Below are positions 19,166-36,876 of a stretch of DNA of 64,000 bases, in pieces (position 1 is the stretch's first letter; the number at the start of each line of letters is the position of its first letter). Under the pieces are notes generated by a model. It saw nothing but the letters and a program-made list of their open reading frames with translations. It searched no databases and was not told where the DNA came from. The stretch spans positions 62,001 through 126,000 of the IMG/VR virus record IMGVR_UViG_3300037502_002993. The stretch is one strand, 5' to 3'. Made by a program: the position numbers and the translations under genes.

Positions 19166-19214
19166 AAAGACAACTCCAGAAAAGAACCCCCCACATCGGC
19201 GGGGGGTTAGTTCA

Positions 19215-19342
19215 TTGACACTCCACTCCCTAAAGGAAGTGGATTCTTGCTTCATTGAACTGACTTACCTTCGGTAAGGAAGGCAGAGGTCCTGTTCTCC
19301 ACAAGCGTTTTACGAGTCCGTATACCCTACGGCCTCTGCTGA
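19215..19342 (-). ncRNA. Stand-alone TnpB omegaRNA scaffold copy A; guide from 19214 downward (TGAACTAACCCCCCGCCGAT)
   Basis: Near-identical to the scaffold at the tnpB 3' end (30550-30677). Ends in a hairpin plus GTGTCAA. No nuclease gene is adjacent. Confidence 0.75.
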
Positions 19343-19350
19343 CTCATAGC

Positions 19351-19578
19351 TCAAGCTACATCTAAGCGGTATAACAATTCAGTAGAGCGACGTTGCATTA
19401 CCGGAAGTGCTTTGACCTCATCAAGGTTACGTCCGGTAGAGAGGTCCAGTGCATAGGCATCGATATCAAAGTCATCTTCAGAGGGAAGTGACAACACGAT
19501 GGGGTCATCCTCGATCTCAGATGCCAGACTGCTCCAGAACCCCGTACCATTTACCTGTGTGAGTATGTTATCTACCAT
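19351..19578 (-). CDS. Small acidic hypothetical protein
   Basis: 75-aa ORF with GGAG RBS. Confidence 0.45.
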   Translation of the reverse strand: MVDNILTQVNGTGFWSSLASEIEDDPIVLSLPSEDDFDIDAYALDLSTGRNLDEVKALPVMQRRSTELLYRLDVA

Positions 19579-19823
19579 TTTTATTGGCTCCTCAGCCCTT
19601 CAGTTGTTGCGTTATTGTGGGGTTCATTCCCCATCGGATTGTGTAAGATTACGTCATGCTATGCATGGGTGGGAACATTTCCACCAATGAGGGGGTGATC
19701 CAGCTGCTAACGCTGTCCTTAAGCGTCTGCTCCTACCGTGATGGTAGTCGAGGCCTTACGTCTACCTGTGCGCCATGCATGACCCGCCCCACCTCCGGGT
19801 GGGGCGTTATGCCGTGAGTTTAT

Positions 19824-20552
19824 CTAAGTGCACTTCTTAACATGGGCACGCAGCGTCATTAAGTCGATCTGTAGTCGCAGGGTCCGTCTCGGATTGAAAC
19901 GATACAACAATAGGTAATCAGCCCGATAAGGCGTCAAGGAGAACTGCTGGAGATTCCATTCACGGGTGGCCAGCATGGCGCTTAAAGGGGACAATAATAC
20001 GTTCGTGAAGGCGTTAAGGTTCCTACGGAAGGTATCCTCCACGTCATGGGTGGCGTAAAGCAGCATGGTAAGTTGTTGAACGTCTAACACTGACTGCTTT
20101 GATAAGTACAGTTCCGAGAGTTTCGGGTAGTCGTCTCGCACGGTTGACGTGAGCACAAAGAAGGGACTGTCCCCATCGCTCAGTTCCCATGTTTGTTGAA
20201 TGGCACTTTTCTTGGGATTCGTGGACAGGGCGGAGTGGGTTTTCCCTTCACGTAACGCGGAAGGACAAAACGGGTCGATGAGAGTTTCTGCTAATTGATC
20301 CACATAGATCGGAATGTCCACTACCCCTTCGTACACCACCTTGGCGGCATTGAGCTTGCGCTCACACTCCTCAATAGTCATGGCGGGGGTGAAGGTGGTC
20401 CGTACCACTTCGAGTTTGGCCTCAACCAACAAGCGCCGTTTATGAAGGGTATCGGTCCAGAGTTCACGCTCATCCCCAAACCGCCGTCCGATGGCGACCT
20501 CGTCATCCACGACTAACCGCCGTTTGAAATCAACAAAGGACGGCTTTTTCAC
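19824..20552 (-). CDS. Hypothetical protein
   Basis: 242-aa ORF with GGAGG RBS. Confidence 0.6.
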   Translation of the reverse strand: MKKPSFVDFKRRLVVDDEVAIGRRFGDERELWTDTLHKRRLLVEAKLEVVRTTFTPAMTIEECERKLNAAKVVYEGVVDIPIYVDQLAETLIDPFCPSALREGKTHSALSTNPKKSAIQQTWELSDGDSPFFVLTSTVRDDYPKLSELYLSKQSVLDVQQLTMLLYATHDVEDTFRRNLNAFTNVLLSPLSAMLATREWNLQQFSLTPYRADYLLLYRFNPRRTLRLQIDLMTLRAHVKKCT

Positions 20553-20553
20553 A

Positions 20554-21210
20554 CTACCTCCCTGAGACTAACTCTCGGTGTTTGAGAAACCCATCCAGGT
20601 GAAATAAGAATCCCAGTTCATACGGAAGGTTGGAACACCCGAACGCCACCATGATCTTATCGCCCGTTCTGGTGAACTGCCGCACGGGAAATTGATCAAG
20701 GCAGGAGAACGGATGTTGGAGGAAGGCTTGGATTATTACGTCAAACCAACCCTCGCTAGATGGCACGGTTAGTATCCCCTCGTGTAGATATCGCACGAAG
20801 GGGAAGTGCATGTCAGGTTGTTCGCGTTCGATCTCGTAGACTTGGACTACGTTATTTTGTCGATCGGTATCGGACACCAAGCTGTACAGGGCCGCAGTCT
20901 CAAGCCCTGCCCACTTGACCTCACCGCCAATCCGAACGACTAAGTCTTTGGAGAGCGGCAATGGGATCAGCTGCTCACACGCAACCTTGGCGCTCTCGAA
21001 CCCGAAATGCAGAAGGGAGAAGAGTTCATCTAGCTCGTCGATGTGTTGTTGGATGTTAGCTTCGGGCAGTCCTGCATCTTCCATCCCCTTCCGTAAGCCT
21101 CCTTCAAAACTCTCTCGGTACTCCCCACCGAGGGATGTGGCATAGCTCTGCACGACAGGTAGTGGTATTGCTGAGATAAGTTCCGACTGATCCATTAGGA
21201 TTCTCTCCAC
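20554..21210 (-). CDS. Hypothetical protein
   Basis: 218-aa ORF downstream of the promoter-like motif at 21241-21259. Confidence 0.6.
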   Translation of the reverse strand: MERILMDQSELISAIPLPVVQSYATSLGGEYRESFEGGLRKGMEDAGLPEANIQQHIDELDELFSLLHFGFESAKVACEQLIPLPLSKDLVVRIGGEVKWAGLETAALYSLVSDTDRQNNVVQVYEIEREQPDMHFPFVRYLHEGILTVPSSEGWFDVIIQAFLQHPFSCLDQFPVRQFTRTGDKIMVAFGCSNLPYELGFLFHLDGFLKHRELVSGR

Positions 21211-21333
21211 GGGTAGGTTGATTTACCATAACAGCCTAAACATGATCTAGGTGTGAGAAATGTTCGAACCCCAAAAAAAGAACCCCCCGAAGGGGGCAGG
21301 TCCCATACCGAGACCCAAGGGGCACACAGGAGA

Positions 21334-21912
21334 CTACAACCGGCGTGAGGCTTTTAACTCTCCAGGAACATCCACCCCCCGGACCTCAAAAGGGCGTGGA
21401 GAGATATGTATGTTGCCTTGGATGTCAGAATTTACCATCAGATAGTGGTAGATGCAGTAAGCGGCGCGATGCCGACTCTCATCACTGACATTGAAGGGAG
21501 TCAACAGACGCGTCATCGTTTGCCGGGTGATGTTGCGACCATCCACTTCCCACTCTTTGAGTTCGTGGAGTAGGAAGGTGGCGAGAACAGACCCCTCCAG
21601 GTGAACGCTCCAGTCCTTCGGCTCATGGGGGCCATTGGAGTTCTTGATGATGAGATAACCCACATCGGACAGGAAGCGTTTAAACAAGTAGGTGTGGCGG
21701 CGGTAGATATGGTCAAGTCCCTCAACTCCCAGGGCATGGATGACCGCGCCCATTCCGAATCGCAGTCGCTTCACCTCCAGCAACTCCACGGACTCTTCTT
21801 CCTTACCCAGTAACACCATGATGTCCAACAGTGGTGCGGGGACGTCTTTGGTGGTCATCCGTATGACGTTGTAAAGTGAGCGTTCAATGAAGGGCATGGG
21901 ACTACTCCACAT
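21334..21912 (-). CDS. Hypothetical protein
   Basis: 192-aa ORF followed by a hairpin and U-tract terminator. Confidence 0.55.
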   Translation of the reverse strand: MWSSPMPFIERSLYNVIRMTTKDVPAPLLDIMVLLGKEEESVELLEVKRLRFGMGAVIHALGVEGLDHIYRRHTYLFKRFLSDVGYLIIKNSNGPHEPKDWSVHLEGSVLATFLLHELKEWEVDGRNITRQTMTRLLTPFNVSDESRHRAAYCIYHYLMVNSDIQGNIHISPRPFEVRGVDVPGELKASRRL

Positions 21913-22168
21913 TGGACAGGTTGGTCATCAGGGCGATGGCGTAGACACCCCCTGACATTAACAGCGCCAGTGGGGTGGCGTACCAGTCCAGTTGCTGGGA
22001 AAGCAGGGCCGCAAGGCCCCATCCCACCAGACCCGCGCCCACGGCATAAACACCGCGCGGAAGCCCGGTGGCGTGGTAGTGCTGGGCAGCCAGAGCAAGC
22101 ACTGGCCTCAGGGCAAAATGAAGGAGGACGATAACAGCGATGAAGACAGCAAGATCGATGAGAGACAT
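21902..22168 (-). CDS. Small membrane protein
   Basis: 88 aa with about 3 hydrophobic segments; RBS present. Confidence 0.55.
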   Translation of the reverse strand: MSLIDLAVFIAVIVLLHFALRPVLALAAQHYHATGLPRGVYAVGAGLVGWGLAALLSQQLDWYATPLALLMSGGVYAIALMTNLSNVE

Positions 22169-22202
22169 TAGTCTTTCCTCTTTTTGATTTTTATGAAGCG
22201 AC

Positions 22203-22415
22203 TTACACAGTGGGGTAGGGGGCAGTCCCCACCCAGATGACGATGGTCAGAGTGATCACCGCAACCGTCACGATCGGAGTAATCAGAAGGTGGTGGAACT
22301 GCAGGGGGTTCATAAGACCGATAGCGTGAGTCAGACACTCCCCGATCACCCAGCCGGTGAAGGCGGCGAGAGTCAGTATCACAGCGGTGGTTAAGAGATA
22401 AGTGGTAGTGTTCAT
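22203..22415 (-). CDS. Small membrane protein
   Basis: 70 aa with two hydrophobic segments; first gene after the promoter-like motif at 22442-22460. Confidence 0.55.
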   Translation of the reverse strand: MNTTTYLLTTAVILTLAAFTGWVIGECLTHAIGLMNPLQFHHLLITPIVTVAVITLTIVIWVGTAPYPTV

Positions 22416-22717
22416 GTCCGTATCCTCAGTGGATTCACCTCAAGGATATAGATGTCAAATTCGATAGAATCCGTAAATCAACCTATAAGGCACTCTAAGA
22501 GGCGCTAGGGGTCACCCACCCTACCCCACAGGGGCAATCGGTAAAACGCCCTACAGGGCCTTGTAAGCGCTTTTAGCGGCATAAATGCAACCACCCCCTT
22601 AAGGGTGGTCAAAGGTGCGGTTCTTAGGAGTAGACGTGAACGTGTTTAGGTTCCATCAAGTTAAAGGGCATGTGATTTTATAGTTCCTACATACCCCACC
22701 ACCCAATAGGCCCCTTC

Positions 22718-23092
22718 ATGCTTAATCAACTTACCGCTGCAATTGATCACTACACCCAGGCATTAAAAACCTACGTACAGAGCCGTACAGGTGCGGTCGC
22801 TGTGGCAGAGACCGCCGTCATTGCGGCTAACACCGCACATAGCTATAACCTCGCAACACTACTAGGAGTTAATCATGCGCAGTACGATAAGCTCTCTTCT
22901 GTCATCGTGGTCAAGGTCCTCGACACCGATGCCAACTCCCCCACCAGTGGACTTTACATCAACTCAGAAGCCGTGATCACCACCGGGGTTGATGCAGAGG
23001 GTGTTGTCGTGATCCATAACCACCACACAGCAGCCGTAACCTGTTACATCCGGATTGATGTGCCGCTGGTGGCTGCTAATCCGATCGGATAG
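22718..23092 (+). CDS. Probable virion structural protein
   Basis: 124-aa ORF heading a plus-strand three-gene unit. Confidence 0.55.
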   Translation: MLNQLTAAIDHYTQALKTYVQSRTGAVAVAETAVIAANTAHSYNLATLLGVNHAQYDKLSSVIVVKVLDTDANSPTSGLYINSEAVITTGVDAEGVVVIHNHHTAAVTCYIRIDVPLVAANPIG

Positions 23093-23101
23093 GAGTAAGT
23101 C

Positions 23102-24886
23102 ATGTCAGTCATCACTCCAGACATTCGCCCGATGCACTATGTCGGAGCCCGTACGGTGAACTGGTCGGTTGACCCGGACGCTTTCGGAGTAGCGGTTACG
23201 GTAAACGACCTGGCCCCTGCGATCTCTGAGTATATCGCCTATGACACCTTGAACCCACCTAACCCGTTCCTTGCTGTCACTCAAGACGGGAATGGTAATG
23301 TGGTCTATGATGGCGGCTTTCCTAAGTTTTACAACAGCCGAGGACCAGATGCTTTAGATACCCAGTTTTCTCAACTGAATGCCAGTTTTAAGTTTCTCTA
23401 TAATGCGATTAATTTCTGCGCTAACCCGATCAAGGTGGCGGAAGGTAACCGCAAGGTTCTCCTAGTGGGCGATCAGCTGAGTGGCAATCCCTATTCTGTC
23501 AAGGACACCGCTGCCAGTAGTTTCCGCACCAGCTTCACGCGCTTATGCAATATCGCCAACTTTGAGCTAACCATCAAAGACCGCAGTGATTGGGGCGGGG
23601 CCATTAACTTTAACTTCACTGAGTTAGATCAATACTGCTGCGTGATTGTGATGGGCAGTGACTTCACTGAAAATCCCAACCACATCACCAATCAAGCCGT
23701 ACAGGACATAGTTACGTATCGCAGTTTGGGTAACGGCATCATCTTGATTACGGATCACGGACCTAACCTTCTTAACATTACCCAGGCGCAGCAGTCACAC
23801 AGCGGCTTCTTCACCATCTGTAACCGCATTGCGGTGAACTTCGGAGCCTATTTCACTGGTGATGTCAATCGTTCCCCAGTCAATGTGGGGTTCTTGCGGT
23901 CAACCTACGGGAATCACCCGCTATATAACGGAATGGCAGATAGTGAGGATATCTTTGCTGGCGGGTCAGAAAGCATCGTCGTAGTGACCGAAACTCCGGT
24001 ATTCGCACCAGAAACCCTTCCTGCGTCCCCTATGATAGACCCAGGGCGTTACACCTTTAACTTTCTGGTGGTCTATGATGACCGGTCTCTTGCAACCGTA
24101 AGCTTTACCTACACGATCATCGAAGGCGAGTTTGTTTTCCTTAAAGACGCCAGTGGTGATGTCAGGACCAATTACCAACTCAGTACGTTTCGCGATATGG
24201 CGGACTTCACCTTAGAGAACACCGACGCCTCCATGGGCACTCTGGTGGGGGATGTACTACGCAATGACCGTAAGGTGGGGGAGTTCGTTCATAGTCAAAG
24301 CGGAACGGTGTTTCAATGGTTTTCAGGTGGTGACGCTTCTTTCCCAATGGAGGAGGGGGATCGTATCGGTTTAGAAGTTCGTCAACCCTTTGGGTACTAC
24401 GTGGAGACAACGGTGGTGAAGCAGCAAGTAATCCCTTTCCCCACCAAGAACCTCGCGGCCATGATGGCAAGCCTCAATCAGGGTGATCTCTCAGGGCTAT
24501 CTCCTGAAGCGGCGTTTGACCACCTGGCACAATACAGTCATCGGATCTATTTCCCAGACCAAACCCGTCAGGTAAGAAAGTATGCTCAGGACGCCCAACA
24601 CATCGTCCATGCATTAACCAACCCTCAGGCCCTACCGCCGGTGGAGCGCTATATCTACGCCACCACTCAAGCGTTAACGGCAGATCTCCCCACAGTCCCG
24701 AGTGGAGCGATGGTGGTGATTGATGCCCAAACAGGCAACGTGTATACCCGACAAGACAGCACTTGGGCCATTGATAACGGGCTTCAAGCACAAGACTTTC
24801 TTGGTGCTCCCCGGGTGATTATTCACCCCATCTCTAGGGTAACATTCACCCTTCACGAAAACGGCACCTTTACGCACCAGGACTGA
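23102..24886 (+). CDS. Probable virion/tail-associated protein
   Basis: 594 aa with AGGAG RBS. The VVYDGGFPKFYN motif resembles phiKZ-like virion proteins. Confidence 0.55.
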   Translation: MSVITPDIRPMHYVGARTVNWSVDPDAFGVAVTVNDLAPAISEYIAYDTLNPPNPFLAVTQDGNGNVVYDGGFPKFYNSRGPDALDTQFSQLNASFKFLYNAINFCANPIKVAEGNRKVLLVGDQLSGNPYSVKDTAASSFRTSFTRLCNIANFELTIKDRSDWGGAINFNFTELDQYCCVIVMGSDFTENPNHITNQAVQDIVTYRSLGNGIILITDHGPNLLNITQAQQSHSGFFTICNRIAVNFGAYFTGDVNRSPVNVGFLRSTYGNHPLYNGMADSEDIFAGGSESIVVVTETPVFAPETLPASPMIDPGRYTFNFLVVYDDRSLATVSFTYTIIEGEFVFLKDASGDVRTNYQLSTFRDMADFTLENTDASMGTLVGDVLRNDRKVGEFVHSQSGTVFQWFSGGDASFPMEEGDRIGLEVRQPFGYYVETTVVKQQVIPFPTKNLAAMMASLNQGDLSGLSPEAAFDHLAQYSHRIYFPDQTRQVRKYAQDAQHIVHALTNPQALPPVERYIYATTQALTADLPTVPSGAMVVIDAQTGNVYTRQDSTWAIDNGLQAQDFLGAPRVIIHPISRVTFTLHENGTFTHQD

Positions 24887-24892
24887 TACCGC

Positions 24893-26959
24893 ATGATTAG
24901 TTCATTCAGAAGTATTCTCGGGGCGATTCACATCACTCAGAAGGGTAAGGTTATTCGGATCTCGGGGCTGTCTGCCCGAGGCTTTACTCGCGGCATAGCC
25001 AGTCTTTGGAAAACCAACCGCATCGTTAAGCACATGTTTACGAGGGTGGGGGGTAGCTACGTGGAGTTTCCGCTCTTCTTTGCCCCCGATGTACTCTACA
25101 TGGTAGAGACAATGATTGACCAACGTCCTAGGGGGGTTAATGTCAGGGCACTGGCAAAGGTACGGAAGCTACTTCTTGCCGACACCTGGTTGTCCGATAC
25201 CCTCCTTGACCCCACCCCTATCCTTGATTTAAAGCAAATTGATCAACTGCACCTACGTCCTAAGGACTATCAGTTAGATTTCCTTAAGACGTACGATCAG
25301 AAAACACAACAGTATCATCTCGGTGGGTATCTTCTGGCAGGCAGTGCGGGTTCAGGTAAAACCGTCACATCCATGTGGCTGGGCGCCTATCTGAATGTCG
25401 ATACCGTACTTGTGATCTCTCCAAAAAATGCCGTGGAGCGCGTGTGGGAATCTGAGATCCTGTCAAAGCACAAGCAGAAGAAATCCTACTGGATCTATGC
25501 CCAAGGAAAGCCTTGGAACGACCCCCACTATGTGGTGCTGCATTATGAAGCCCTCACTCAAGCTGAGTGGTTATTGAGTAAGCTCAAGGACCGCAAACGG
25601 GTACTGGTGATACTCGACGAATGCCATAACCTCAATGACATCAAGTCACTGCGCACTCAACGTTACTTGGATCTCGTGACAAAGCTTCGGCAAACCACCG
25701 AACGGCTTGACGTCCTGCCAATGTCGGGAACACCGTTGAAAGCAATGGGGGCTGAACTCATTCCACTTCTAACGTCATTCGACCCCTACTTTGACCTTCA
25801 AGCCCAGGATCGTTTCAAACGCATCTACGGCAGCGATGGGAACCGAGCGTTAGACATTCTCAACCACCGCATGGGCAATGTATCTTACAAAGTGGCTAAA
25901 ACTCAACTGGGTCTGGCTGAGCCGGATTACCGTCAACTTAAGATCACCATTCCAAAAGGGGAACGGTATACCCTAAAAGCCATTGCGGAGGACATGCGGA
26001 CCTTTATTGATGAGCGGGCGGCCTACTACAAAACACGCAAGGATGACGATCACGCGTTCTACCGCCAGTGTTTAGAGTACGTAGAAGAAAGACTCACTGG
26101 ATCAAAACTCAAGGAGTTAGCCACCTATAAGCAGTACGTCAAACGGGTCATTGCTGCCCGGGGGGACTCTCGCCAGGTAGGTGATGAGGTGGTGTGGTGC
26201 AACCATTTTGAGAAGACCGTTATCATTCCTCTTCTCCCAAAAGAGTGGCAGGCCCCCTTCAGGGAGGTGAAGTCCATTGTCAAATACCTGAACTTAAAAA
26301 TTCAAGGTGAGGCATTGGGTAGAATCCTTGGGCGCAAACGTACGGAATGTCATGTGGAGATGTGTCGAGCCATTGACTACGAGGCCATTTGCAGTGAAAC
26401 AACGAAAAAGACAGTAGTGTTCACGTCGTTTGTTCCAGTCCTTGAAGAGGTAGAACAACTCCTTACAAAGTCAGAAGAGCTCAATCCCCTCAAGGTCTAC
26501 GGTAAGACCAATAATGAACTGGCCCGTATCATTCAGTCGTTTGACGACCAGGAGGACCTTAATCCCCTCATCGCCACCTATCAGTCGCTATCCACCGCGG
26601 TCCCACTGGTGATGGCGGACACCATGATCATGATCGATGCTCCTTTCCGTGCCTATATTCGTGAACAGGCCATTGCTCGTATCAACCGACTGGGGGCGGA
26701 TACCCAGGCGACCATTTGGGAATGTAGTCTAGACACGGGAGCAGAGCCTAACATCAGTACCCGTAGTGCCGATATCTTGGAATGGAGCCAGCAACAAGTT
26801 AATGCGATCATGGGGACCGATACGGAATTTAACGCCAGTATTGAAGACCATACAGCGGTGGTATCCCTGGAAAGCCATGATATTGAGGTGGTGAATGGGT
26901 CGTTTGAAACCTCCCCTTCTGTAAGGACAGACAACTTACCTAACTACGTGGTCTGGTAA
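24893..26959 (+). CDS. SF2 (DExH) helicase
   Basis: Walker A GSAGSGKT, DECH, SGT and motif VI QAIARINR. Confidence 0.85.
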   Translation: MISSFRSILGAIHITQKGKVIRISGLSARGFTRGIASLWKTNRIVKHMFTRVGGSYVEFPLFFAPDVLYMVETMIDQRPRGVNVRALAKVRKLLLADTWLSDTLLDPTPILDLKQIDQLHLRPKDYQLDFLKTYDQKTQQYHLGGYLLAGSAGSGKTVTSMWLGAYLNVDTVLVISPKNAVERVWESEILSKHKQKKSYWIYAQGKPWNDPHYVVLHYEALTQAEWLLSKLKDRKRVLVILDECHNLNDIKSLRTQRYLDLVTKLRQTTERLDVLPMSGTPLKAMGAELIPLLTSFDPYFDLQAQDRFKRIYGSDGNRALDILNHRMGNVSYKVAKTQLGLAEPDYRQLKITIPKGERYTLKAIAEDMRTFIDERAAYYKTRKDDDHAFYRQCLEYVEERLTGSKLKELATYKQYVKRVIAARGDSRQVGDEVVWCNHFEKTVIIPLLPKEWQAPFREVKSIVKYLNLKIQGEALGRILGRKRTECHVEMCRAIDYEAICSETTKKTVVFTSFVPVLEEVEQLLTKSEELNPLKVYGKTNNELARIIQSFDDQEDLNPLIATYQSLSTAVPLVMADTMIMIDAPFRAYIREQAIARINRLGADTQATIWECSLDTGAEPNISTRSADILEWSQQQVNAIMGTDTEFNASIEDHTAVVSLESHDIEVVNGSFETSPSVRTDNLPNYVVW

Positions 26960-26981
26960 ACAAAAAAGAAACGGCATAGCT

Positions 26982-27002
26982 GCCCTCCCGTAATGGGAGG
27001 GC
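26982..27002. terminator. Bidirectional terminator hairpin
   Basis: GCCCTCCC-gtaat-GGGAGGGC between convergent genes. Confidence 0.6.
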
Positions 27003-27039
27003 GTCTATGTCGCTGGTCTTACGATTAGCGAGGCCACGA

Positions 27040-27165
27040 TTAAGCGGCCTTCTTCTTCGGGATGATGTTATCCATCCACGAGGGCTTCTTGGCCTCCTCT
27101 TTGAGTACCCTGCGGGTGGACTCAGGAAGGGCTGCGAGTTGACGATCAAGCCAATCATTCTTCAT
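27040..27165 (-). CDS. Small protein (41 aa, MKNDWLDRQLAALPE...)
   Basis: AGGAG RBS and a promoter-like motif at 27205-27223. Below the ORF-track cutoff. Confidence 0.5.
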   Translation of the reverse strand: MKNDWLDRQLAALPESTRRVLKEEAKKPSWMDNIIPKKKAA

Positions 27166-27269
27166 GGTCATGCTCCTATGACATCATTGGGACTTATCAT
27201 GGGAGTCATATAGATCTTAAATCCACTGGAATGTGACTTAACTGCTGGCCACCGTATGTTTACTCCATG

Positions 27270-27731
27270 TCACGGATAGACTTGTACAAATCGATGGTTA
27301 CCGATCTGTACCATGGAGATGGGGTTGCGTCCCCAAGGCGGTGAGGACACACTCGGATTGAAAAAGTGATCGGCTCCTTCAGTGACGTCATCAATCCCTT
27401 CCTGAAAGGACCGCGCCACAAGAGCCAGGGTTTCATGGAAACTCTCAATGTCACCAGGTTCCGTTAACACGACGTCATCCAGACTTCTTCCAGCACTGAC
27501 ATGAGAAAACTGACCGGGTTGATGGAGTACCCCACAGAGATCATCGGGAAACCGGTAGAGCTCACTACGCGTGATAGCGACATTGGCCACGGCCTTTTTC
27601 CCAACCCAACGTTCCCCATTGGCTTCGAAATGGACGATCTCGGTTAAACACATGGCGTCCTTAAGATCAGCTGGCGCTACCTCACCCCCCAGGACAAAGA
27701 GGGCGAATGCGGCTGCCTTTACCACCGCCAT
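27270..27731 (-). CDS. Cell wall hydrolase, SleB/Hydrolase_2 family
   Basis: CLTEIVHFEANGE...AVANVAITR...FPDDLCGVLHQPGQFS...GNHRF, with an N-terminal signal-like segment. Confidence 0.85.
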   Translation of the reverse strand: MAVVKAAAFALFVLGGEVAPADLKDAMCLTEIVHFEANGERWVGKKAVANVAITRSELYRFPDDLCGVLHQPGQFSHVSAGRSLDDVVLTEPGDIESFHETLALVARSFQEGIDDVTEGADHFFNPSVSSPPWGRNPISMVQIGNHRFVQVYP

Positions 27732-28192
27732 GGTGCATCGTTCTCCAGTTGCAGAAAGCTATCACGGATGGCACGGGCATCTTCAAGTGCATTGTGTTTG
27801 ATCTTTGATGCCTTAGCAGAGAGGCGATCATCAATGATCAAATTTACTACGCGTCCGGTCTTCTCACCAAACCACTCACCAGGACCCGTCTCCATGACCT
27901 CAGCCAGGTATTTGTGATCAATGGGGTAGTCGGCAAACACCGAGATCCTCCCAAATTGGTCAAGAAATGCCGCCAGTTTCATTTTGAGATCATCCAGCGG
28001 AATGGCCTCTTTCCCCAAGATCGGCATGATGTTGTCTTTCACCCAAGGGTCCAGCTCGTCAGGGCACTCGGTGACCTCATAGAACTCATGTTTCCCACAA
28101 TCACTCACCAGGGCAATGGAAATCAACTTCCCCATCTGGCCGTTGAATTCAGAGTCGGTAAAGAGTACGACCGACGGTTTTTGATCAGACAT
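27719..28192 (-). CDS. DEDD-type 3'-5' exonuclease (Rv2179c-like)
   Basis: LFTDSEF, LISIALV and HNALEDA motifs. Confidence 0.75.
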   Translation of the reverse strand: MSDQKPSVVLFTDSEFNGQMGKLISIALVSDCGKHEFYEVTECPDELDPWVKDNIMPILGKEAIPLDDLKMKLAAFLDQFGRISVFADYPIDHKYLAEVMETGPGEWFGEKTGRVVNLIIDDRLSAKASKIKHNALEDARAIRDSFLQLENDAPWRW

Positions 28193-28271
28193 GGGCATTC
28201 CCTTTTGTCGAAAAAAGAAAGTCAAGCTGCTTCATCAGATAAGGGGGACGCGTGTCCCCCTGTTGACGGCG

Positions 28272-28865
28272 TTAAGGCTGGGAAGGGAGACCGCACAGGT
28301 CCGACGAGCGGTCTCGCCAGCACATGCGGTACAGCATCCCTTTGAGGCGTTCGGCTTGCCGCTTACGACTCCCCTCACTCCACCAGGCGTTATCATCATC
28401 CTCGACATAGATCGGTGGGTAGGTTTCTCCCAGTGGTCCAGTCCCCTCCTGGAAGGCCACAATGGCTTGGTCCTCCACTGTGGTGACGTAATACCCCCGA
28501 GGAAGGGAAACCACCTGCCCTTCCAGTAAGATGGTTCCCAGACCACCGTACTCCCCTCTGGGCTCGCTTGAGGCGATGTCACGACATACCCCATGCCGAC
28601 ACTCTAAGTGGGTGAATGATAACCAGTCCTGCGTGTAGACCACACCCTCCCCCTCCCGTTTTAACTGCACCTCAACGGCAAAGGGAAGGATGTGGGTTTC
28701 ACAGTCAATCATCTCTCCCACACTTTCACACAGAAGAACCTCGGGTACGTCCTCCCCGTACCAAGGAGGGGCCTTGGCAAACCACCAGTGGCTTTCTGCT
28801 GCATGAACATGCCCACTCACCCCAAGGGCAAGATAACCTACCACTATCCAGACGAAGCGGTTCAT
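28272..28865 (-). CDS. Hypothetical exported/membrane protein
   Basis: N-terminal signal peptide-like segment ending AHAA. Confidence 0.55.
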   Translation of the reverse strand: MNRFVWIVVGYLALGVSGHVHAAESHWWFAKAPPWYGEDVPEVLLCESVGEMIDCETHILPFAVEVQLKREGEGVVYTQDWLSFTHLECRHGVCRDIASSEPRGEYGGLGTILLEGQVVSLPRGYYVTTVEDQAIVAFQEGTGPLGETYPPIYVEDDDNAWWSEGSRKRQAERLKGMLYRMCWRDRSSDLCGLPSQP

Positions 28866-28890
28866 TTTTGATTTTTCTCAGTAAGTTAAG

Positions 28891-29814
28891 TTAGCAGGCC
28901 ATCATTACAACGTCGTTGGGACTATCCAGTAGGATATCCTGGGGCTGGTCCTCGTCGTACGCAAGATAGAGTTCGTCATTCCCCACCGCCTCATCATACC
29001 AATCTACGCTTCCTCGATGGACCAGAAGCTGTGTAGTATTCACGATTACCTCAAGAGGCGGGACGCCCATGGCGTAAGCCGTGAGGTGGGCAAGTAGACC
29101 CGTGTTAAACCAAACGCTTGCTAACTGTTGACCAAATGTGATCTCCGGGTAGGTAGCGTTGACTGCAAGACCCGTTCGAGGCACCCCCATGGCGTCCATC
29201 TTCTCTTCGGTCAGCATTTCGATACCTTCATCTGAATCCAGCCAGCCGTCTTTTCCATCACGTCCCGACAGGTGCTCCACAAAGCCGCAGGCAACGATAT
29301 CCCGGCGTTCCTTAAGAGTGAGCTCTCGCAGATAGAACTGCAGGTGAGGTTTCAAGTAGGGAGGCACGTCATCCCCTACAACCTCAAGGGTCATCACAGA
29401 GCGTAAGGGACGCTCCGGGAGGTATTGAATCACCTCCATCAGCGGATCAGACACGCGACTAACCAGTGATACCGCATCATCAATGGGGGTGATGGTAACT
29501 CCTAGCTCTTCACCTTCTACAAACTCCTCTTCCTCCAAGTCAATGAACTCATGCGTGACCCGGTAACGCAGTGATGCCCAGGGGGAGTCGGCATTGTTAT
29601 CACCGAGCATGTCAAAGAAGGCCAGCTTCGCTTCTTCGATATTAAATTCAGCCAGCCGAGATGAGTAGGGAATGCCATTTCCTGTTAGGAAAAAGTTCAT
29701 CGGGGGAGGGGACACGTAAGCGCTCTCCTGACTTGGGTCGGTAGCCTCAATAAACACTTCGACAACACAATCAAGAATGTCATCAAGTACATCGTGAAAG
29801 ACCGGGATGGACAT
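28891..29814 (-). CDS. Acidic hypothetical protein
   Basis: 307-aa ORF with AAGGA RBS. Confidence 0.6.
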   Translation of the reverse strand: MSIPVFHDVLDDILDCVVEVFIEATDPSQESAYVSPPPMNFFLTGNGIPYSSRLAEFNIEEAKLAFFDMLGDNNADSPWASLRYRVTHEFIDLEEEEFVEGEELGVTITPIDDAVSLVSRVSDPLMEVIQYLPERPLRSVMTLEVVGDDVPPYLKPHLQFYLRELTLKERRDIVACGFVEHLSGRDGKDGWLDSDEGIEMLTEEKMDAMGVPRTGLAVNATYPEITFGQQLASVWFNTGLLAHLTAYAMGVPPLEVIVNTTQLLVHRGSVDWYDEAVGNDELYLAYDEDQPQDILLDSPNDVVMMAC

Positions 29815-29867
29815 AAGGATTCCTTAAGGGTAGAGAGTTTCACTGAGCGGGTGTAGTGTTATAGTCC

Positions 29868-30152
29868 TCAATCATTATCTTTCCAGGAAGGGTTCCAGTG
29901 AGTGTCACCGTTGTCATCGACACTTTCATCCTCCCACCCAAGGGGGAGGCACTCATCGCCCATCATCTCAGAATCCCACTCGATCTGCAGGGGAGTGCCT
30001 TCACCGGTATCACTGGCATCACGCTCCGGCTCCTCGGGGGGGTGAGTGAAGTGACGGCTGAAGGAGGTGTCCTTATACCCCCACGGAAACGAAGCGGTGG
30101 TCGGGGTGTTCACCTCACCCAGGGTTCTGAGGTAATCCTGTTGAAAGTTCAT
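29868..30152 (-). CDS. Small acidic hypothetical protein
   Basis: 94-aa ORF with GGAGA RBS. Confidence 0.45.
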   Translation of the reverse strand: MNFQQDYLRTLGEVNTPTTASFPWGYKDTSFSRHFTHPPEEPERDASDTGEGTPLQIEWDSEMMGDECLPLGWEDESVDDNGDTHWNPSWKDND

Positions 30153-30335
30153 GGTCGTTCTCCAGTATAGCGCTATATCGCCCTAGAGGGCCTCTTAAAC
30201 GCATTTAAAGTAAAAGATGTATGTTGGTATCACCTGCGGCATAAAAACGCTCACAGCGTCTTACAGGGCGTTTTAGTGGGTATATCGAAAGGACACATAG
30301 CCAGACCCCCTTACTTGAGGTCTGGATGTGGGGTA

Positions 30336-30521
30336 TTATGCCGGAAGCGCACGCAAGGGGCGGTAGAACTTCTCAAAGCGGGCTAGAGGGACGGTCTCCC
30401 GATCTTGGCGTCCTTCTTGCTGAACCACGACCTTATCGCGGCGAACCTCTTTTACGGTCACGACCTGTACGGTGCCGTGCCGCTCGAATTTGAATTGTTG
30501 ATTGAGATACGCTTGGCTCAC
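30336..30521 (-). CDS. Small hypothetical protein
   Basis: 61 aa, AGGAG RBS and GTG start. The RBS lies within the tnpB guide region. Confidence 0.55.
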   Translation of the reverse strand: MSQAYLNQQFKFERHGTVQVVTVKEVRRDKVVVQQEGRQDRETVPLARFEKFYRPLRALPA

Positions 30522-30549
30522 TCGTACGTCTCCTTCACGGTTTCATTGC

Positions 30550-30677
30550 TTGACACTCCCCTTCTTAAAAGAAGGGGATTCTTGCTTCACAGAACTGACT
30601 TACCTTCGGTAAGGAAGGCAGAGGCCACTTTCTCCACAAGCGTTTAGTGAGTCCGTATGCCCTACGGCCTCTGCTAA
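30550..30677 (-). ncRNA. TnpB omegaRNA (cognate copy B); guide from 30549 downward (GCAATGAAACCGTGAAGGAG)
   Basis: Begins just after the tnpB stop. Nested stems, terminal 9-bp hairpin and TCAA right end as in IS200/IS605 elements. Confidence 0.85.
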
Positions 30678-30686
30678 AGCCACTGT

Positions 30687-31904
30687 TCAAGCAGTGAGGT
30701 GGTGTTCTTGGATGAACACCGCTGTGAGTGTTTGTCTTAAATGACTGGTGGGCGGTAGTTGTTCCAGAGCCATGGTCCTTAAGTTGATGGCCGCGTTGTG
30801 ATCGCGATCATGCGTGGTCTTGCAAGAAGGACAATCCCACCAGCGTTGGTGTAGCTTGAGCTTCAGTTTCCCCTCTAAACGATGGTTACACGCACTGCAG
30901 GTCTGAGTACTGGGAAAGAATCGTTCCGCAATGACGACCTTGCAGTGCTGTGACTCATCGGCCTTGTAGACCAACTGAGTCAGGAACTGCCGCCATCCAC
31001 AATCAGCAATGTGTTTAGCGAGTCTCCTGTTCCTGACCATACCCTCAATATTGAGGTCCTCAATAGCAATAGTCATGCATTGGTCTACAAGGCTTCTAGA
31101 AAGCTTGTGCTGAAAGTCCATCCGACACCGCTTGGTTTTTGCGTATATCTTGGCGACTTTCAGCCTCTGCTTTCTGTAGTTGGCACTGCCTTTGACTTTG
31201 CGTGATAGATCGCGCTGTGCCCTCGCCAGTTTCCTGGCATACTGCCCTTGGTATTTGGGTTTGGCATACTCCTTCCCTTCTGAGTCTACCGCAAAGGTCT
31301 TAATCCCTAAGTCCGATCCCAAATGAGACTCCCCATTCGTGAGTCGAGGTTCACATTCACAAATGAAACAAGCATAATACTTACCATCAGACTCACGAAT
31401 GATACTACAGGAAGAAGGTTGGGTGGGGAGTACCCCACCCCATTTCTCGTTCTTGTAACTCCATTTAGTTTTGATGGGGGACTGCATGACTTTCGCCATG
31501 CGGAAATCCCCTGTTTCTAGATTTAAAGTAAAAGCAGCCTTCGTCAGTCGGATGGACTGACGACTGACCCGCTTCTTGTACTTGGGAAATCCAATCTTCC
31601 CTTTCCCTTTGAAAAAGGATTGGAAAGCAGTCCCTAGGTCCCGTAGGGACTGCTGTAGGATGACGGATGAAACCTCATAGAGAAACCCAAACTCATCTTT
31701 TAGTTCGGGAAGACGGTAGGTGAGTGCATTTGCACTCAGTTTGGGTTTCTCTAATGTTGGGTCCGTCTGGTAGGCTTTGTATTCCTCTTGTACCCTACCC
31801 AGTACCTGATTCCAGACAAACCGTTTACAGCCAAACGACCTCACCAGGAGGTCAGTTTGCATGGCATTCGGATAGATCCGAAAACGAAATGTTTTCGTTG
31901 CCAT
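30687..31904 (-). CDS. tnpB: TnpB RNA-guided endonuclease (IS200/IS605 family)
   Basis: FRFRIYPN...FGCKRFVWN N-terminus, RuvC-I GSDLG, RuvC-II IEDL, zinc finger CSAC/CPSC and RuvC-III DRDHNAAINL. All three catalytic residues are present. Confidence 0.95.
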   Translation of the reverse strand: MATKTFRFRIYPNAMQTDLLVRSFGCKRFVWNQVLGRVQEEYKAYQTDPTLEKPKLSANALTYRLPELKDEFGFLYEVSSVILQQSLRDLGTAFQSFFKGKGKIGFPKYKKRVSRQSIRLTKAAFTLNLETGDFRMAKVMQSPIKTKWSYKNEKWGGVLPTQPSSCSIIRESDGKYYACFICECEPRLTNGESHLGSDLGIKTFAVDSEGKEYAKPKYQGQYARKLARAQRDLSRKVKGSANYRKQRLKVAKIYAKTKRCRMDFQHKLSRSLVDQCMTIAIEDLNIEGMVRNRRLAKHIADCGWRQFLTQLVYKADESQHCKVVIAERFFPSTQTCSACNHRLEGKLKLKLHQRWWDCPSCKTTHDRDHNAAINLRTMALEQLPPTSHLRQTLTAVFIQEHHLTA

Positions 31905-31984
31905 GGTTGGCCTCCTGGGGAAATGAGTTAGTGTATATGTTAGTATTTAATGGTCTCTCACCAGGCGGGGTCTGGTGATGCAAA

Positions 31985-32899
31985 TCATCCTCCACCTGAA
32001 GGAGGAGGCTTTATGACCACTGGGTAACCTGACGTTTGGTTGGGATCGGCATCACGCAGCGGGGGTTTCTTTTGTGTAATGATCTTGGGTAATGTTTTAA
32101 CTAACACCTTTTCCATTTTGGTTCTTGGTTTGCCAATGGCTTTCAGCCACTCTTCTGGCGTAAGGTTCCTTTTTATTGAATTACAGGTCTGGCAGGATAG
32201 AGTGGCGTTAACTTCTGAGTTAGATCCACCCCTAGACTTGGGGATCTTGTGCTCCCATTGGAGAATTTTATCCCCACTAACTCCAAGGCAGTATTGGCAC
32301 GTATGGTTGTACCTGTAGAGTAGATACTCACGCATCTCGGTACCGAAGAGCCTGCCCTTCTGATATTCTTTGTCTTTGATACCAGGATTCTTCAGTAAGT
32401 GGGTATCAAACTTTACCTCTTCGACCTTGGCGCTGGTGATGGGACACCAGCGCATGAAGCGATCGATCCAAGTCTGGGTAGTGAGTGCTCGATGTTGGAT
32501 GGAGGGTGGAAGCCACCCTTTAGGTCTAGCGCGGTTCAAGAACCGCGCGGGACGATACCGGGTTTTCCTAGAACGACGAGATCGGCGATACATTGCTCGG
32601 CTAGCCAAACGCTTACGGATCACCTGACCGCGATGCACTAGGTTAATTCCTAACACGCATCGGTCCCCTCGCTTATCGTGAGAGATCACGGCAATCCCGG
32701 TGGTCTTCGAACCAGGATCAATCTGAATGGAAAAGTTATTCCTGATTGGTCCTTTCGGGACATAGTTCAGAATGATAATGAATGGGTACCGTCGGAAGAC
32801 GGCGGCTTTGCCCTTGCGTAACAATTCCCGAGCACGTGCTGGATGACACGGTGCTAAAGGAATTCGATTGGCGTCTAGCACCAATACGTAATTTGACAT
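31985..32899 (-). pseudogene. iscB: IscB (RRXRR/HNH) endonuclease, C-terminally truncated
   Basis: PLAP-C motif, RuvC-I IDPGSK, RRSRRSRKTRYRPARFLNR, RuvC-II E, and HNH EHKIPKSRGGSN...CQTCN. Homology stops at PLRDA (~32048), before RuvC-III and the TAM-interacting domain. Confidence 0.85.
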
Positions 32900-33153
32900 G
32901 ATTTAGGTTTCCCTAATAGTCTACTCGGGTTCAAGACCCTTGTGTTACGTGAACCTCGACAATGTTCAAAAGGCTTGTCATGCACGCCGCACCGCCCCTA
33001 CCTCACAGGACTTTTAACGACGCACCTTAGAGCCAGGGGCTGGTTCGGCCACCCCTGGGTAAGATCACCTAATGAACGGAGTCCCTGTTAGGGGACAGAG
33101 TCTGGTCAGCATTCCCGGAAGGGGACTCCAAGTTGATGGAGGGTGTTACTGAC
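32900..33153 (-). ncRNA. IscB omegaRNA (5' guide from flank 33154-33170)
   Basis: Upstream of iscB. Contains GTCAGTAAC start, TGACCAGACT, CCAGCCCCTGGCTCT and AACATTGTCGAGG blocks typical of IscB omegaRNAs. Confidence 0.75.
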
Positions 33154-33750
33154 AATATCGCTAACCGTGCTCTTGGTGGTGTCATGACAAAGGGCCGTGT
33201 GGTTACCTGCCTTCTGCAATCGTTGCCGGGCAAACAGGTGACGCCTTTGATCGAGGGTTGTGTCATCTAAGACGTCCAACCGATTGATATCTTCCCGATC
33301 ACGAATCCGCTCACGGATGGTGGCGTTGTCCGCGTCCAGGTAGAGCGTCAGATTGGGAGGAACAATAGGTACCCACCCCAGGCCCTTTGGGGTAGTGTTA
33401 GCAATCAGGGTATCAAGTGTCGGGTTGTTGTCACCCTGATAGACATAGGTGGTATCGAGGTGACGGTCACTGATCACCCACCAGCCTTCATCCACTAGCG
33501 GTTTGATGACCTTGGTCAGGTGCTCCCACCGCTGGGCCTGCATGATAAGAATCTCCGTCTCAGGACACAGATCGGTGTAGCGAAACAGTAACGATCGGAT
33601 CTCCTCACCGAATGGGGTCCCTCCGGGTTCTTTGGTGAGGGTGGCCTTATGACCCAAGCTGTTTAGAGCATCTCTTAACGCCCTAGCAATAGTGGACTTA
33701 CCTACGCCATCCTGCCCTTCGATGATAATGAACCCACCTGATGGTGTCAT
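33106..33750 (-). CDS. tmk: Thymidylate (dTMP) kinase
   Basis: IEGQDGVGKST P-loop, TKEPGGT and SDRH..TTYVYQG. The last 15 residues come from the inserted element. Confidence 0.9.
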   Translation of the reverse strand: MTPSGGFIIIEGQDGVGKSTIARALRDALNSLGHKATLTKEPGGTPFGEEIRSLLFRYTDLCPETEILIMQAQRWEHLTKVIKPLVDEGWWVISDRHLDTTYVYQGDNNPTLDTLIANTTPKGLGWVPIVPPNLTLYLDADNATIRERIRDREDINRLDVLDDTTLDQRRHLFARQRLQKAGNHTALCHDTTKSTVSDIVSNTLHQLGVPFREC

Positions 33751-33815
33751 CCTACCTCCTTTGAATTAGCTGGACACAATTCGCAAAGAGCCTGCAAACT
33801 CGTCACCTCGGTGAT

Positions 33816-33943
33816 TTGACACTTCCCTTCTTTTAAGAAGGGAATTCTTGCTTCATTGAACTGACTTACCTTCGGTAAGGAAGGCAGAGGCCACGTTCTC
33901 CACAAGCGTTTTACGAGTCCGTATGCCCTACGGCCTCTGCTAA
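33816..33943 (-). ncRNA. Stand-alone TnpB omegaRNA scaffold copy C; guide from 33815 downward (ATCACCGAGGTGACGAGTTT)
   Basis: Near-identical to copy B with compensatory changes in the terminal hairpin; ends GTGTCAA. Confidence 0.8.
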
Positions 33944-34023
33944 AGTCACTGTATTTAGTGGCCTTATACCAGACTACGTCTGGAGATATCATTCACCCCC
34001 CTCCTTTAGGAGGGGGTTTTACG
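33816..34023 (-). mobile_element. Mini (ORF-less) IS200/IS605 derivative
   Basis: Left-end-like hairpin CGTAAAACCCCCTCCTAAAGGAGGGGGGTG (33994-34023), then the scaffold and TCAA right end. Confidence 0.55.
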
Positions 34024-34061
34024 ATCGCAATCGATAAAGATCCTGCAAGATCACCATCCTG

Positions 34062-34080
34062 GTGATATAAGTCTGAAAAT
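34062..34080 (-). promoter_or_regulatory. Putative phage early promoter upstream of omegaRNA copy C and tmk
   Basis: ATTTTCAGACTTATATCAC fits the repeated motif. Confidence 0.45.
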
Positions 34081-34095
34081 GACTTCAATCCACTG

Positions 34096-34130
34096 TTGAC
34101 ACTCCCCTTCTTAAATGACGGGGTTTTACG
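34096..34130 (-). repeat. Single-hairpin IS end remnant
   Basis: CGTAAAACCCCGTCATTTAAGAAGGGGAGTGTCAA joins the left-end prefix to the right-end suffix. Confidence 0.55.
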
Positions 34131-34206
34131 ACCACAACCGATAAAAAGAATACCACAATAGACAGCCCGCACTTAAGCGGGCTGTCGGAATGACGCTAAC
34201 GCACTA

Positions 34207-36480: not shown

Positions 36481-36876
36481 ATGCGTGAACTTCACGGCCA
36501 CAAAGTCAATCCCGCCAACGATACCGTGACTATTAAAGTCACTGATGAGCCCGGCCAGGGTGGTGCCAACCACCGTTATGAGATCTCTGGTTTTAATACC
36601 GAGACTAATGCGTCTCGGTTGGACCATGATGGTAACCGTCAGCAAGTCAACCTCCTGTTCCAGAATGGTCCCATTCCTGAGTTCGGCGTCAACGGTATCA
36701 CTCACGAGGTACTGTTGGCCATCCTAATTGACCGTTTGCAGGGTTTCCAGAACGGCCCCTATGCCTGTCGTGAAAACGCCCTTGCGTTAACGAAACTACA
36801 AGAAGCGCAAATGTGGCTCCAGTCCCGCACTCGCGAACGAATGACCAGGGGTGTAGAGGGAACTCACGAAAAATAG
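36481..36876 (+). CDS. tad1: Tad1-like anti-Thoeris/anti-CBASS signal sponge
   Basis: GxGGAxHxY...FQxG...LL.I..DRL..FQ.GP...RENA.ALT...EA.MW...R...R..R.V.GT pattern follows Tad1 along its full length. Confidence 0.8.
   Translation: MRELHGHKVNPANDTVTIKVTDEPGQGGANHRYEISGFNTETNASRLDHDGNRQQVNLLFQNGPIPEFGVNGITHEVLLAILIDRLQGFQNGPYACRENALALTKLQEAQMWLQSRTRERMTRGVEGTHEK

What the first reader, a model, noticed from the sequence alone, without database searches (positions are those of the whole stretch)
19215..33943. One intact TnpB with three omegaRNA scaffolds carrying three different guides in a jumbo phage
Seen: the ~128-nt scaffold after tnpB (30550-30677) recurs at 19215-19342 and 33816-33943 without any nuclease gene. 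Each copy ends in GTGTCAA and is followed by an unrelated guide: TGAACTAACCCCCCG, GCAATGAAACCGTGA and ATCACCGAGGTGACG. The terminal 9-bp stem differs among copies only by pair-preserving changes (TCCACTTCC/GGGAGTGGA, TCCCCTTCT/AGAAGGGGA, TTCCCTTCT/AGAAGGGAA). The GCAGAGGCC/GGCCTCTGC (one mismatch in copy A), CCGTA/TACGG and CTTACC/GGTAAG stems are kept. TnpB retains all three RuvC catalytic residues, and no tnpA is in the window. Known: TnpB loads omegaRNAs in trans, and nucleus-forming phages can use their own imported homing nucleases against co-infecting relatives. Inference: this may be a dispersed multi-guide RNA-guided system that protects several loci or attacks competitor phages lacking the inserts.
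Basis: partly seen in the sequence, partly recalled or inferred. Interest (0 to 1): 0.85.

Follow-up and report, generated by a model that had tools for sequence, protein, structure and literature searches.

The report
TnpB transposon family in jumbo phage
A nucleus-forming jumbo phage carries a family of small TnpB guide-RNA transposons, so the three "scaffolds with different guides" are an intact copy and two decayed copies of an ordinary kind of element living in an unusual host.

Summary
Three ~137-nt copies of one structured element lie at 19215-19351, 30550-30686 and 33816-33952, all on the minus strand. Each ends in GTGTCAA, and each is followed by unrelated DNA. The middle copy follows an intact tnpB.

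The window is part of a 220.6-kb chimallin-encoding, phiKZ-like contig. That contig holds eight such scaffolds plus one 45-nt relic, with three intact tnpB genes and one truncated one.

The ends are IS608-like: the left end starts after TTAT or TTAC, the right end stops at TCAA, and both carry subterminal hairpins. Copy C is a gene-less mini-element with both ends. Copy A is a right-end remnant that keeps the last seven tnpB codons. Another sample still has tnpB at the site of a second mini-element, and a related phage has a full element where copy A lies.

The "different guides" are therefore simply the flanks of separate insertions of an IS200/IS605-type, TnpA-less family. Standalone omegaRNAs that work in trans are already described.

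Three things are new. The host is a nucleus-forming phage. Related TnpBs recur in other phiKZ-like phage contigs and are under purifying selection. A truncated IscB with its HEARO RNA sits next to tnpB. Trans use of the solo guides, or use against rival phages, is possible but not shown.

The parts
19215..19353 (-). Copy A: solo omegaRNA scaffold / right end (RE) with no left end, ending in GTGTCAA at 19215
   Evidence: Covariance model R1 scores 152 bits.
19351..19372 (-). Relic of the last seven tnpB codons plus stop. It is of the c34020 type (...RLDVA*) and is fused in frame to the 75-aa ORF 19351-19578.
   Evidence: Read from the sequence and the alignment with the tnpB-linked copies.
19199..19214 (-). 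Guide position of copy A (flank TGAACTAACCCCCCGC). It runs into an intrinsic-terminator-like hairpin plus T-run at about 19178-19206.
   Evidence: The 16-nt length is assumed by analogy with ISDra2 (own knowledge).
30550..30686 (-). Copy B: omegaRNA scaffold / RE of the intact element
   Evidence: R1 scores 168 bits. The 125-nt core is identical to that of the element at contig 50072.
30534..30549 (-). Guide position of copy B (flank GCAATGAAACCGTGAA)
30687..31904 (-). tnpB, 405 aa, with the RuvC D-E-D triad and zinc-finger cysteines intact
31905..32023 (-). Left end (LE) of element B with a subterminal hairpin (CCTCCTCC..GGTGGAGG). It starts right after TTAC (32024-32027).
   Evidence: and the LE alignment of six copies.
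31985..32899 (-). iscB truncated at about residue 284-292 of about 440-497. The RRXRR and HNH domains are kept; RuvC-III and the C-terminal domain are missing. The reading frame runs into the LE of element B.
32944..33153 (-). HEARO RNA (the IscB omegaRNA), full length. Its 5' 48 nt overlap the 3' end of the tmk ORF.
   Evidence: Rfam RF02033, 120 bits against a gathering score of 83.
33816..34033 (-). Copy C: a 218-nt gene-less mini-element (PATE/MITE-like). It has an LE (33953-34033, after TTTAT) joined to the scaffold/RE (33816-33952).
   Evidence: R1 scores 168 bits.
33800..33815 (-). Guide position of copy C (flank ATCACCGAGGTGACGA), 65 nt upstream of the tmk start
34096..34140 (-). 45-nt micro-relic: the 5' arm of the LE hairpin joined to the 3' arm of the RE hairpin, ending in GTGTCAA and preceded by TTTAT
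   Evidence: (family D9)

Best explanation
The three scaffolds are right ends of one family of IS200/IS605-type insertion sequences. These elements carry tnpB but no tnpA (IS1341-like). They have spread and decayed inside a chimallin-encoding, phiKZ-like jumbo phage.

The whole contig holds nine insertions, all in one orientation:
- three intact elements (LE, tnpB, RE);
- one 5'-truncated tnpB;
- two internally deleted mini-elements with both ends;
- two RE-only remnants;
- one 45-nt relic.

In the window, B is intact and nested in an older IscB/HEARO element. C is a mini-element. A is an RE-only remnant.

The RE encodes the omegaRNA scaffold. The "guide" is whatever DNA abuts the RE, so every insertion automatically has its own guide.

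Shown here: the anatomy, the ends (TTAY | LE ... RE-TCAA), the intact catalytic residues, purifying selection on tnpB, and a covarying RNA fold.

Inferred from published work on IS605-family TnpB: TnpB loaded with each omegaRNA cuts TTAY-flanked copies of its own flank. That target is the uninterrupted allele in a sister or co-infecting genome. Recombinational repair then copies the element in, which is homing or retention. Solo scaffolds may be loaded in trans and so drive or retain their own loci, but they arise as by-products of deletion.
For: Anatomy of the copies:
- Repeats and their ends.
- Four LE-bearing copies start after TTAT and B starts after TTAC. All REs end in TCAA. Both ends carry subterminal hairpins.
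- Internal-deletion junctions: C joins the LE to the scaffold. The copy at contig 44652 joins the LE plus 27 tnpB codons to the scaffold.
- An independent sample (L092) has the tnpB 3' end and scaffold on the same flank as contig 44652.
- A related phage contig (L093), syntenic with window 8.8-26.4 kb, has a full element at the gene-order position of copy A.

Protein and RNA:
- TnpB domains and catalytic residues.
- The paralogues have dS 0.6-0.9 and dN/dS 0.11-0.17.
- A covariance model finds a scaffold right after every related tnpB.
- 24 of 35 pairs show compensatory changes across 12 distinct scaffolds.

Guides:
- All guides are different, and none has a second match with 2 or fewer mismatches in the 110 kb then held.

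Literature:
- Standalone omegaRNAs and their action in trans are already described (PMC10691335).
Against: - No Y1 TnpA was found in 119 kb of the 220.6-kb contig, beside any tnpB, or in the related phage loci. How nine loci were colonised is therefore not explained.
- The right flank of B is not the rest of iscB, so B is not a simple insertion.
- C is flanked by an imperfect 33-nt direct repeat (23 of 33 bases), read. IS200/IS605 elements do not make such repeats.
- The 125-nt scaffold cores of B and contig 50072 are identical although their tnpB genes have dS 0.9. This needs gene conversion or an exchange of REs.
- No expression or cleavage data exist.
Confidence: 0.8

Rival explanations
1. 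One reading: the solo scaffolds are kept by selection as a dispersed set of trans-acting guides. They would protect their loci or destroy co-infecting relatives that lack the inserts, with TnpB imported into the phage nucleus.
For: - Solo and mini-element scaffolds have no more broken pairs than tnpB-linked ones, and A carries two compensatory changes in its terminal stem.
- All four deletion derivatives keep the whole 125-nt core.
- All nine copies lie in the sense orientation of the neighbouring genes.
- A sits between a stop codon and a terminator-like hairpin.
- tnpB is under purifying selection.
- Related TnpBs recur in phiKZ-like phage contigs.
Against: - The copies were found with probes inside the scaffold, so retention of the core is partly an effect of how they were found. 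The 45-nt relic shows that scaffolds can be lost.
- The compensatory changes may predate loss of tnpB.
- No guide has another target.
- The same pattern of standalone omegaRNAs and PATEs occurs in bacteria without such a role.
Confidence: 0.2
2. The elements are inert fossils. The solo copies do nothing, and the tnpB elements merely hitch-hike in the phage.
For: - A and the copy at contig 14269 lack an LE.
- One tnpB is truncated, and iscB is truncated.
- No tnpA was found.
Against: - dN/dS of 0.11-0.17 at dS 0.6-0.9 shows long-term selection on TnpB while in this lineage. The three paralogues plus the L093 TnpB form one clade.
- The scaffold fold is conserved by covariation across phage lineages.
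Confidence: 0.25
3. Conservation of the repeat reflects DNA hairpins recognised by a TnpA transposase, not an RNA.
For: The best-covarying helix is the subterminal RE hairpin. The LE carries a similar hairpin.
Against: - Covariation also covers the internal hairpins and a long-range helix, about 125 nt in all. TnpA needs only the subterminal hairpin (established IS608 biology, own knowledge).
- No tnpA was found.
Confidence: 0.08

Closest known systems
IS200/IS605-family TnpB elements (ISDra2, IS608; the tnpB-only IS1341 group)
   Same: - TnpB has the same domains and catalytic triad, at E 1e-60 to ISDra2 TnpB.
- The omegaRNA scaffold lies at the RE with the guide outside the element.
- LE and RE carry subterminal hairpins.
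- The LE follows TTAC/TTAT and the RE ends in TCAA, as in IS608 (own knowledge for IS608).
   Different: - No TnpA was found.
- The elements reside in a lytic-type, nucleus-forming jumbo phage, not a cell.
- Protein identity to cellular relatives is at most 43-45%.
Standalone omegaRNAs and palindrome-associated transposable elements (PATEs)
   Same: They are gene-less derivatives that carry IS ends and an omegaRNA with their own guides, in genomes that also encode the effector. They are reported to work in trans (PMC10691335). A PATE is described in bioRxiv 10.1101/2023.11.20.567912.
   Different: - Here they lie in a phage genome.
- A lacks the LE, so it is a remnant and not a mobilisable PATE.
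IscB with HEARO RNA (OMEGA)
   Same: A HEARO RNA at 120 bits lies directly upstream of an RRXRR+HNH ORF.
   Different: The ORF stops at about residue 290 of about 440-497, where the TnpB element begins. The nuclease is therefore probably dead.
Homing endonucleases and introns of phiKZ-like phages (for example the PhiPA3 intron endonuclease that cuts phiKZ; own knowledge, not checked here)
   Same: These are selfish nucleases in nucleus-forming phages that can bias inheritance in co-infection. A group I intron is present in this contig.
   Different: Those recognise DNA through protein. Here recognition would be RNA-guided, and no activity has been shown.

Membership tests
IS200/IS605-type TnpB (OMEGA) element | TnpB with a RuvC D-E-D triad and a zinc-finger/TNB domain | tested here: met
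   Pfam hits. Alignment to ISDra2 TnpB with D191 and the E and D motifs conserved. The residues are conserved in all paralogues.
IS200/IS605-type TnpB (OMEGA) element | A structured omegaRNA scaffold at the 3' end of tnpB reaching the RE boundary, with the guide lying outside the element | tested here: met
   A scaffold follows every tnpB of the related group. 24 of 35 pairs are compensatory. The flanks are unrelated. Transcription was not tested.
IS200/IS605-type TnpB (OMEGA) element | Subterminal imperfect palindromes at the LE and RE | tested here: met
IS200/IS605-type TnpB (OMEGA) element | Insertion 3' of a short conserved motif (TAM) without target duplication | tested here: inconclusive
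   TTAT occurs before four LEs and TTAC before B and the L102 element. The motif is unclear for the copy at contig 190200. C has a 33-nt imperfect flanking repeat. No empty site was available.
IS200/IS605-type TnpB (OMEGA) element | RNA-guided, TAM-dependent DNA cleavage | not testable with these tools
   Needs a biochemical or plasmid-interference assay.
Autonomous IS605/IS608 (with Y1 TnpA) | A Y1 (HUH) transposase gene in the element or the genome | tested here: not met
   An HMM built from 13 TnpAs gave no hit in 119 kb of the contig or in L093-L104. The control gave 23 hits in 22 of 80 bacterial loci. 101 kb of the contig was not read.
PATE / MITE derivative | Both IS ends and no ORF | tested here: met
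   Met for C (33816-34033) and for the copy at contig 44652. Not met for A, which has the RE only.
IscB / HEARO OMEGA system | A HEARO RNA upstream of a full-length IscB (RuvC I-III, HNH, C-terminal domain) | tested here: not met
   The RNA is present. The protein is truncated after HNH, and no C-terminal part lies elsewhere in the window.
CRISPR-like multi-guide array | Repeat-spacer array with regular spacing | tested here: not met
   The copies are 3.3-11.3 kb apart in the window and up to about 94 kb apart in the contig. Each lies in its own IS remnant.
Chimalliviridae (nucleus-forming phages) | A chimallin gene together with phiKZ-like structural genes | tested here: met
   Chimallin_Phikzvirus at E 3e-129 in L008:9353-11422. 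The tail sheath is 52% identical to Pseudomonas phage Noxifer and 50% to PhiPA3. A homologue of PHIKZ128 is present.

The most novel reading that the evidence does not exclude
A group of related TnpB/omegaRNA elements lives in nucleus-forming jumbo phages and persists there without TnpA. It would act as an RNA-guided homing nuclease inside the phage nucleus. Solo omegaRNAs would be kept as trans-acting guides, so that each inserted locus is driven into, or excludes, co-infecting relatives that lack it.
Probability: 0.22. Interest if true: 0.8.

Novelty: new member of a known kind. Interest (0 to 1): 0.5.

Why it matters
Nucleus-forming phages shield their DNA from DNA-targeting nucleases, so a nuclease that acts on phage DNA must get into that compartment. 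Here tnpB has stayed under purifying selection in such a phage. It has multiplied to nine loci, and related TnpBs recur in other phiKZ-like contigs. Together this suggests that RNA-guided homing works inside the phage nucleus. If so, these phages would offer a natural test bed for TnpB function without TnpA and for RNA-guided competition between phages. They would also be a source of compact nucleases that function in a protein-bounded compartment. As it stands, the finding is a well-documented case of an ordinary transposon family in an unusual genome.

Tried and rejected
- Megablast of 8 kb against cultured phages found no match.
- Close relatives of tmk in IMG/VR, and exact-protein look-ups of flanking genes, returned only the source contig. 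No empty-site allele could be examined.
- Species-representative genomes hold only relatives at 43% identity or less (Rhodococcus, cyanobacteria, clostridia). This gives no host clue.
It found 373 relatives, and the source contig is not among the best 80, so the result is inconclusive.
- Walking along the contig by gene look-ups gains only about 10 kb per look-up. I stopped after one step, and 101 kb stays unread.
- I did not search the guides against phage databases. A 16-mer is expected about once by chance in 2.3 Gb, so hits would not be informative.
- A weak bAvd hint of a diversity-generating retroelement near window 52.7 kb was not borne out.
- An assembly artefact was rejected. The copies differ from each other, sit in unique flanks, and one site recurs in an independent sample.
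- A nuclease-dead regulator (TldR-like) was rejected because the catalytic triad is intact.
Full report
**Observation**

The three copies are real. MAFFT and the repeat finder align 19215-19351, 30550-30686 and 33816-33952 over about 137 nt, at 83% and 92% identity to the middle copy. All three are read on the minus strand.

The ORF 30687-31904 (minus strand, 405 aa) is a TnpB:
- It matches OrfB_IS605, the Cas12f1-like TNB domain and HTH_OrfB_IS605.
- It matches ISDra2 TnpB (8bf8) at E 1e-60.
- D198 aligns with ISDra2 D191, and the IAIEDL and HDRDHNAA motifs are kept.

**Source of the window**

The window is positions 62001-126000 of IMGVR_UViG_3300037502_002993, which is JGI Ga0310151_0000032 (220,598 bp). 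Its tail sheath is 52% identical to that of Pseudomonas phage Noxifer and 50% to PhiPA3. Another virion protein matches PHIKZ128. Outside the window the contig encodes a chimallin (PF25677, E 3e-129). "Nucleus-forming jumbo phage" is therefore supported. No cultured phage matches at the DNA level.

**Inventory over the whole contig**

Exact-pattern scans of IMG/VR, and BLAST over the parts I hold, give eight full scaffolds and one relic. All are on the minus strand. The RE ends lie at these contig positions:
- 14269
- 34020
- 44652
- 50072
- 81215 (A)
- 92550 (B)
- 95816 (C)
- 96096 (the relic)
- 190200

Three copies follow intact tnpB genes: B (405 aa), L004:3144-4370 (408 aa) and L007:6001-7218 (405 aa). 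One follows a tnpB that lacks its first 66-80 or so codons. "One intact TnpB" therefore holds for the window only.

**Ends of the elements**

I aligned the regions upstream of the intact genes with those of the gene-less copies. Four copies have a left end that begins immediately after TTAT: contig 50072, contig 44652, C and the relic. B begins after TTAC. Upstream of that point there is no similarity between copies. The LE carries an imperfect palindrome, and the RE carries a similar one and ends in TCAA. These are the end features of IS608-type IS200/IS605 elements (own knowledge).

**What the gene-less copies are**

- Copy C (33816-34033) is the LE joined directly to the scaffold. It is a 218-nt mini-element.
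- The copy at contig 44652 is the LE plus the first 27 tnpB codons, joined to the scaffold.
- Copy A has no LE. It keeps the last seven tnpB codons, fused in frame to a 75-aa phage ORF, followed by the scaffold.
- The copy at contig 14269 has no LE either. Similarity to the other copies starts about 10 nt before the 125-nt scaffold core, and none of the tnpB reading frame is left.
- The 45-nt relic at 34096-34140 is the 5' arm of the LE hairpin joined to the 3' arm of the RE hairpin.

**Evidence that the gene-less copies arose where they now lie**

The single metagenome scan found a 1.3-kb contig from another sample (L092). It holds the 3' end of a tnpB and a scaffold on the same flank as contig 44652, with 2 differences in 60 nt of flank. 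That mini-element is therefore a recent internal deletion.

A 50-kb Logan contig (L093) is syntenic with window 8.8-26.4 kb, and its sheath is 70% identical at the protein level. It carries a full element whose TnpB is 77% identical. The element sits between the homologue of the 75-aa ORF and the downstream genes, which is the gene-order position of copy A.

Another contig (L102) has a full element 24 nt upstream of a tmk gene, much as C lies 65 nt upstream of the window's tmk. However, the two tmk proteins are only 36% identical, and I could not show that L102 is a related phage.

**The guides**

All nine flanks differ. None has a second match with 2 or fewer mismatches in the 110 kb then held, and the 3-mismatch matches lack TTAY. 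In this family the guide is simply the DNA next to the RE, so different guides are expected of any multi-copy element.

**The RNA**

RNAalifold on the eight copies gives 35 pairs, 7 of them with compensatory changes. A covariance model built from them finds a scaffold directly after every related phage tnpB: L102 at 101 bits, L093 at 73, L095-L100 at 43, L104 at 39, L103 at 28 and L094 at 16.

On 12 distinct scaffolds, 24 of 35 pairs show compensatory changes and 96% of cells pair. That alignment is fitted to the model, so it leans towards the structure.

Its 3' arm is absent in four related lineages.

Solo copies have no more broken pairs than gene-linked ones.

**Selection and history**

The tnpB paralogues differ by dS 0.6-0.9 with dN/dS 0.11-0.17. 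In a maximum-likelihood tree the three paralogues and the L093 TnpB form one clade (100/100). All nine TnpBs known to lie in phage contexts are separated from the named gammaproteobacterial TnpBs by a 100/100 branch. The phage side as a whole is only weakly supported and includes sequences of unknown context.

Contexts of the related TnpBs:
- L094: chimallin, a PhuZ-like tubulin and the divergent PolB.
- L095-L100: the divergent PolB, in 18 contigs from several samples.
- L103: an RNA polymerase beta-like gene.

TnpBs related to this one are thus long-term residents of phiKZ-like phages. I found no paper that mentions TnpB together with Chimalliviridae. TnpB in phages in general is known: 419 cultured-phage records match (see also PMC12607003).

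**Unexplained points**

1. No Y1 transposase is present in 119 kb of the contig or in the related loci. The control gave 23 hits in 22 of 80 bacterial loci. The means of reaching nine loci is therefore unknown. A host TnpA acting in trans is the usual assumption.
2. The 125-nt scaffold cores of B and contig 50072 are identical, as are those of contigs 14269 and 44652. Yet the adjacent genes are near saturation at silent sites. This points to gene conversion or an exchange of REs.
3. B begins at a TTAC where similarity to full-length IscB proteins stops, but the DNA after its RE is not the rest of iscB.
4. C is flanked by a 33-nt imperfect direct repeat.

The ORF 31985-32899 is an IscB cut off after its HNH domain. 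It aligns to residues 1-284 of 73%-identical proteins of about 495 aa. It is preceded by a full-length HEARO RNA at 32944-33153 (120 bits). The stretch 30.5-34.2 kb is thus a nest of OMEGA-type elements.

**Verdict**

This is an IS200/IS605-type, TnpA-less TnpB/omegaRNA family with its usual decay products, in an unusual genome. Standalone omegaRNAs that act in trans are already described (PMC10691335). It is plausible and untested.

Noticed in passing
window 31985-33153 (-): A second OMEGA system lies next to tnpB. A full-length HEARO RNA (32944-33153) precedes an IscB ORF that is truncated at about residue 290, where the TnpB element starts. The HEARO 5' end overlaps the last 16 codons of tmk.
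   Followed up: yes
window 33783-33815 and 34034-34066 (-): An imperfect 33-nt direct repeat (23 of 33 bases identical) flanks mini-element C. IS200/IS605 elements are not known to duplicate their target.
   Followed up: partly
window 30550-30674 versus L004:3007-3131; L001:5997-6121 versus L003:12506-12630: Pairs of 125-nt scaffold cores are 100% identical, although the adjacent tnpB genes differ by dS of about 0.9. This suggests gene conversion or an exchange of right ends between copies.
   Followed up: partly
L001:5302-5676 (-) (contig 13574-13948): A group I intron (Rfam, 74 bits) lies about 320 nt downstream of the solo right end at contig 14269. It is also about 500 nt upstream of a segment similar to an RNA polymerase beta-like gene.
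   Followed up: no
window 36481-36876 (+): A 131-aa protein carries an Acb2/Tad1 hairpin domain (E 5e-7). It is a candidate sponge for immune signalling nucleotides.
   Followed up: partly
contig positions 14269 to 190200 (window copies at 19215, 30550, 33816, 34096): All nine insertions have the same orientation and are co-directional with the neighbouring genes. This could reflect strand-specific single-strand transposition or a need for read-through transcription.
   Followed up: partly
window 46220-50125 (-) and 59059-63573 (+): Two kinds of repetitive tail-fibre-like genes are present. One is a 1301-aa protein built of 75-90-nt repeat units. The others are two genes with 180-183-nt tandem repeats that carry an NPH motif, one of them ending in a Peptidase_S74 domain.
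   Followed up: no
L093:11916-13763 (+): The related phage contig carries a dCTP-deaminase-like gene interrupted by an intein with a LAGLIDADG domain. This is one more selfish element in this phage group.
   Followed up: no
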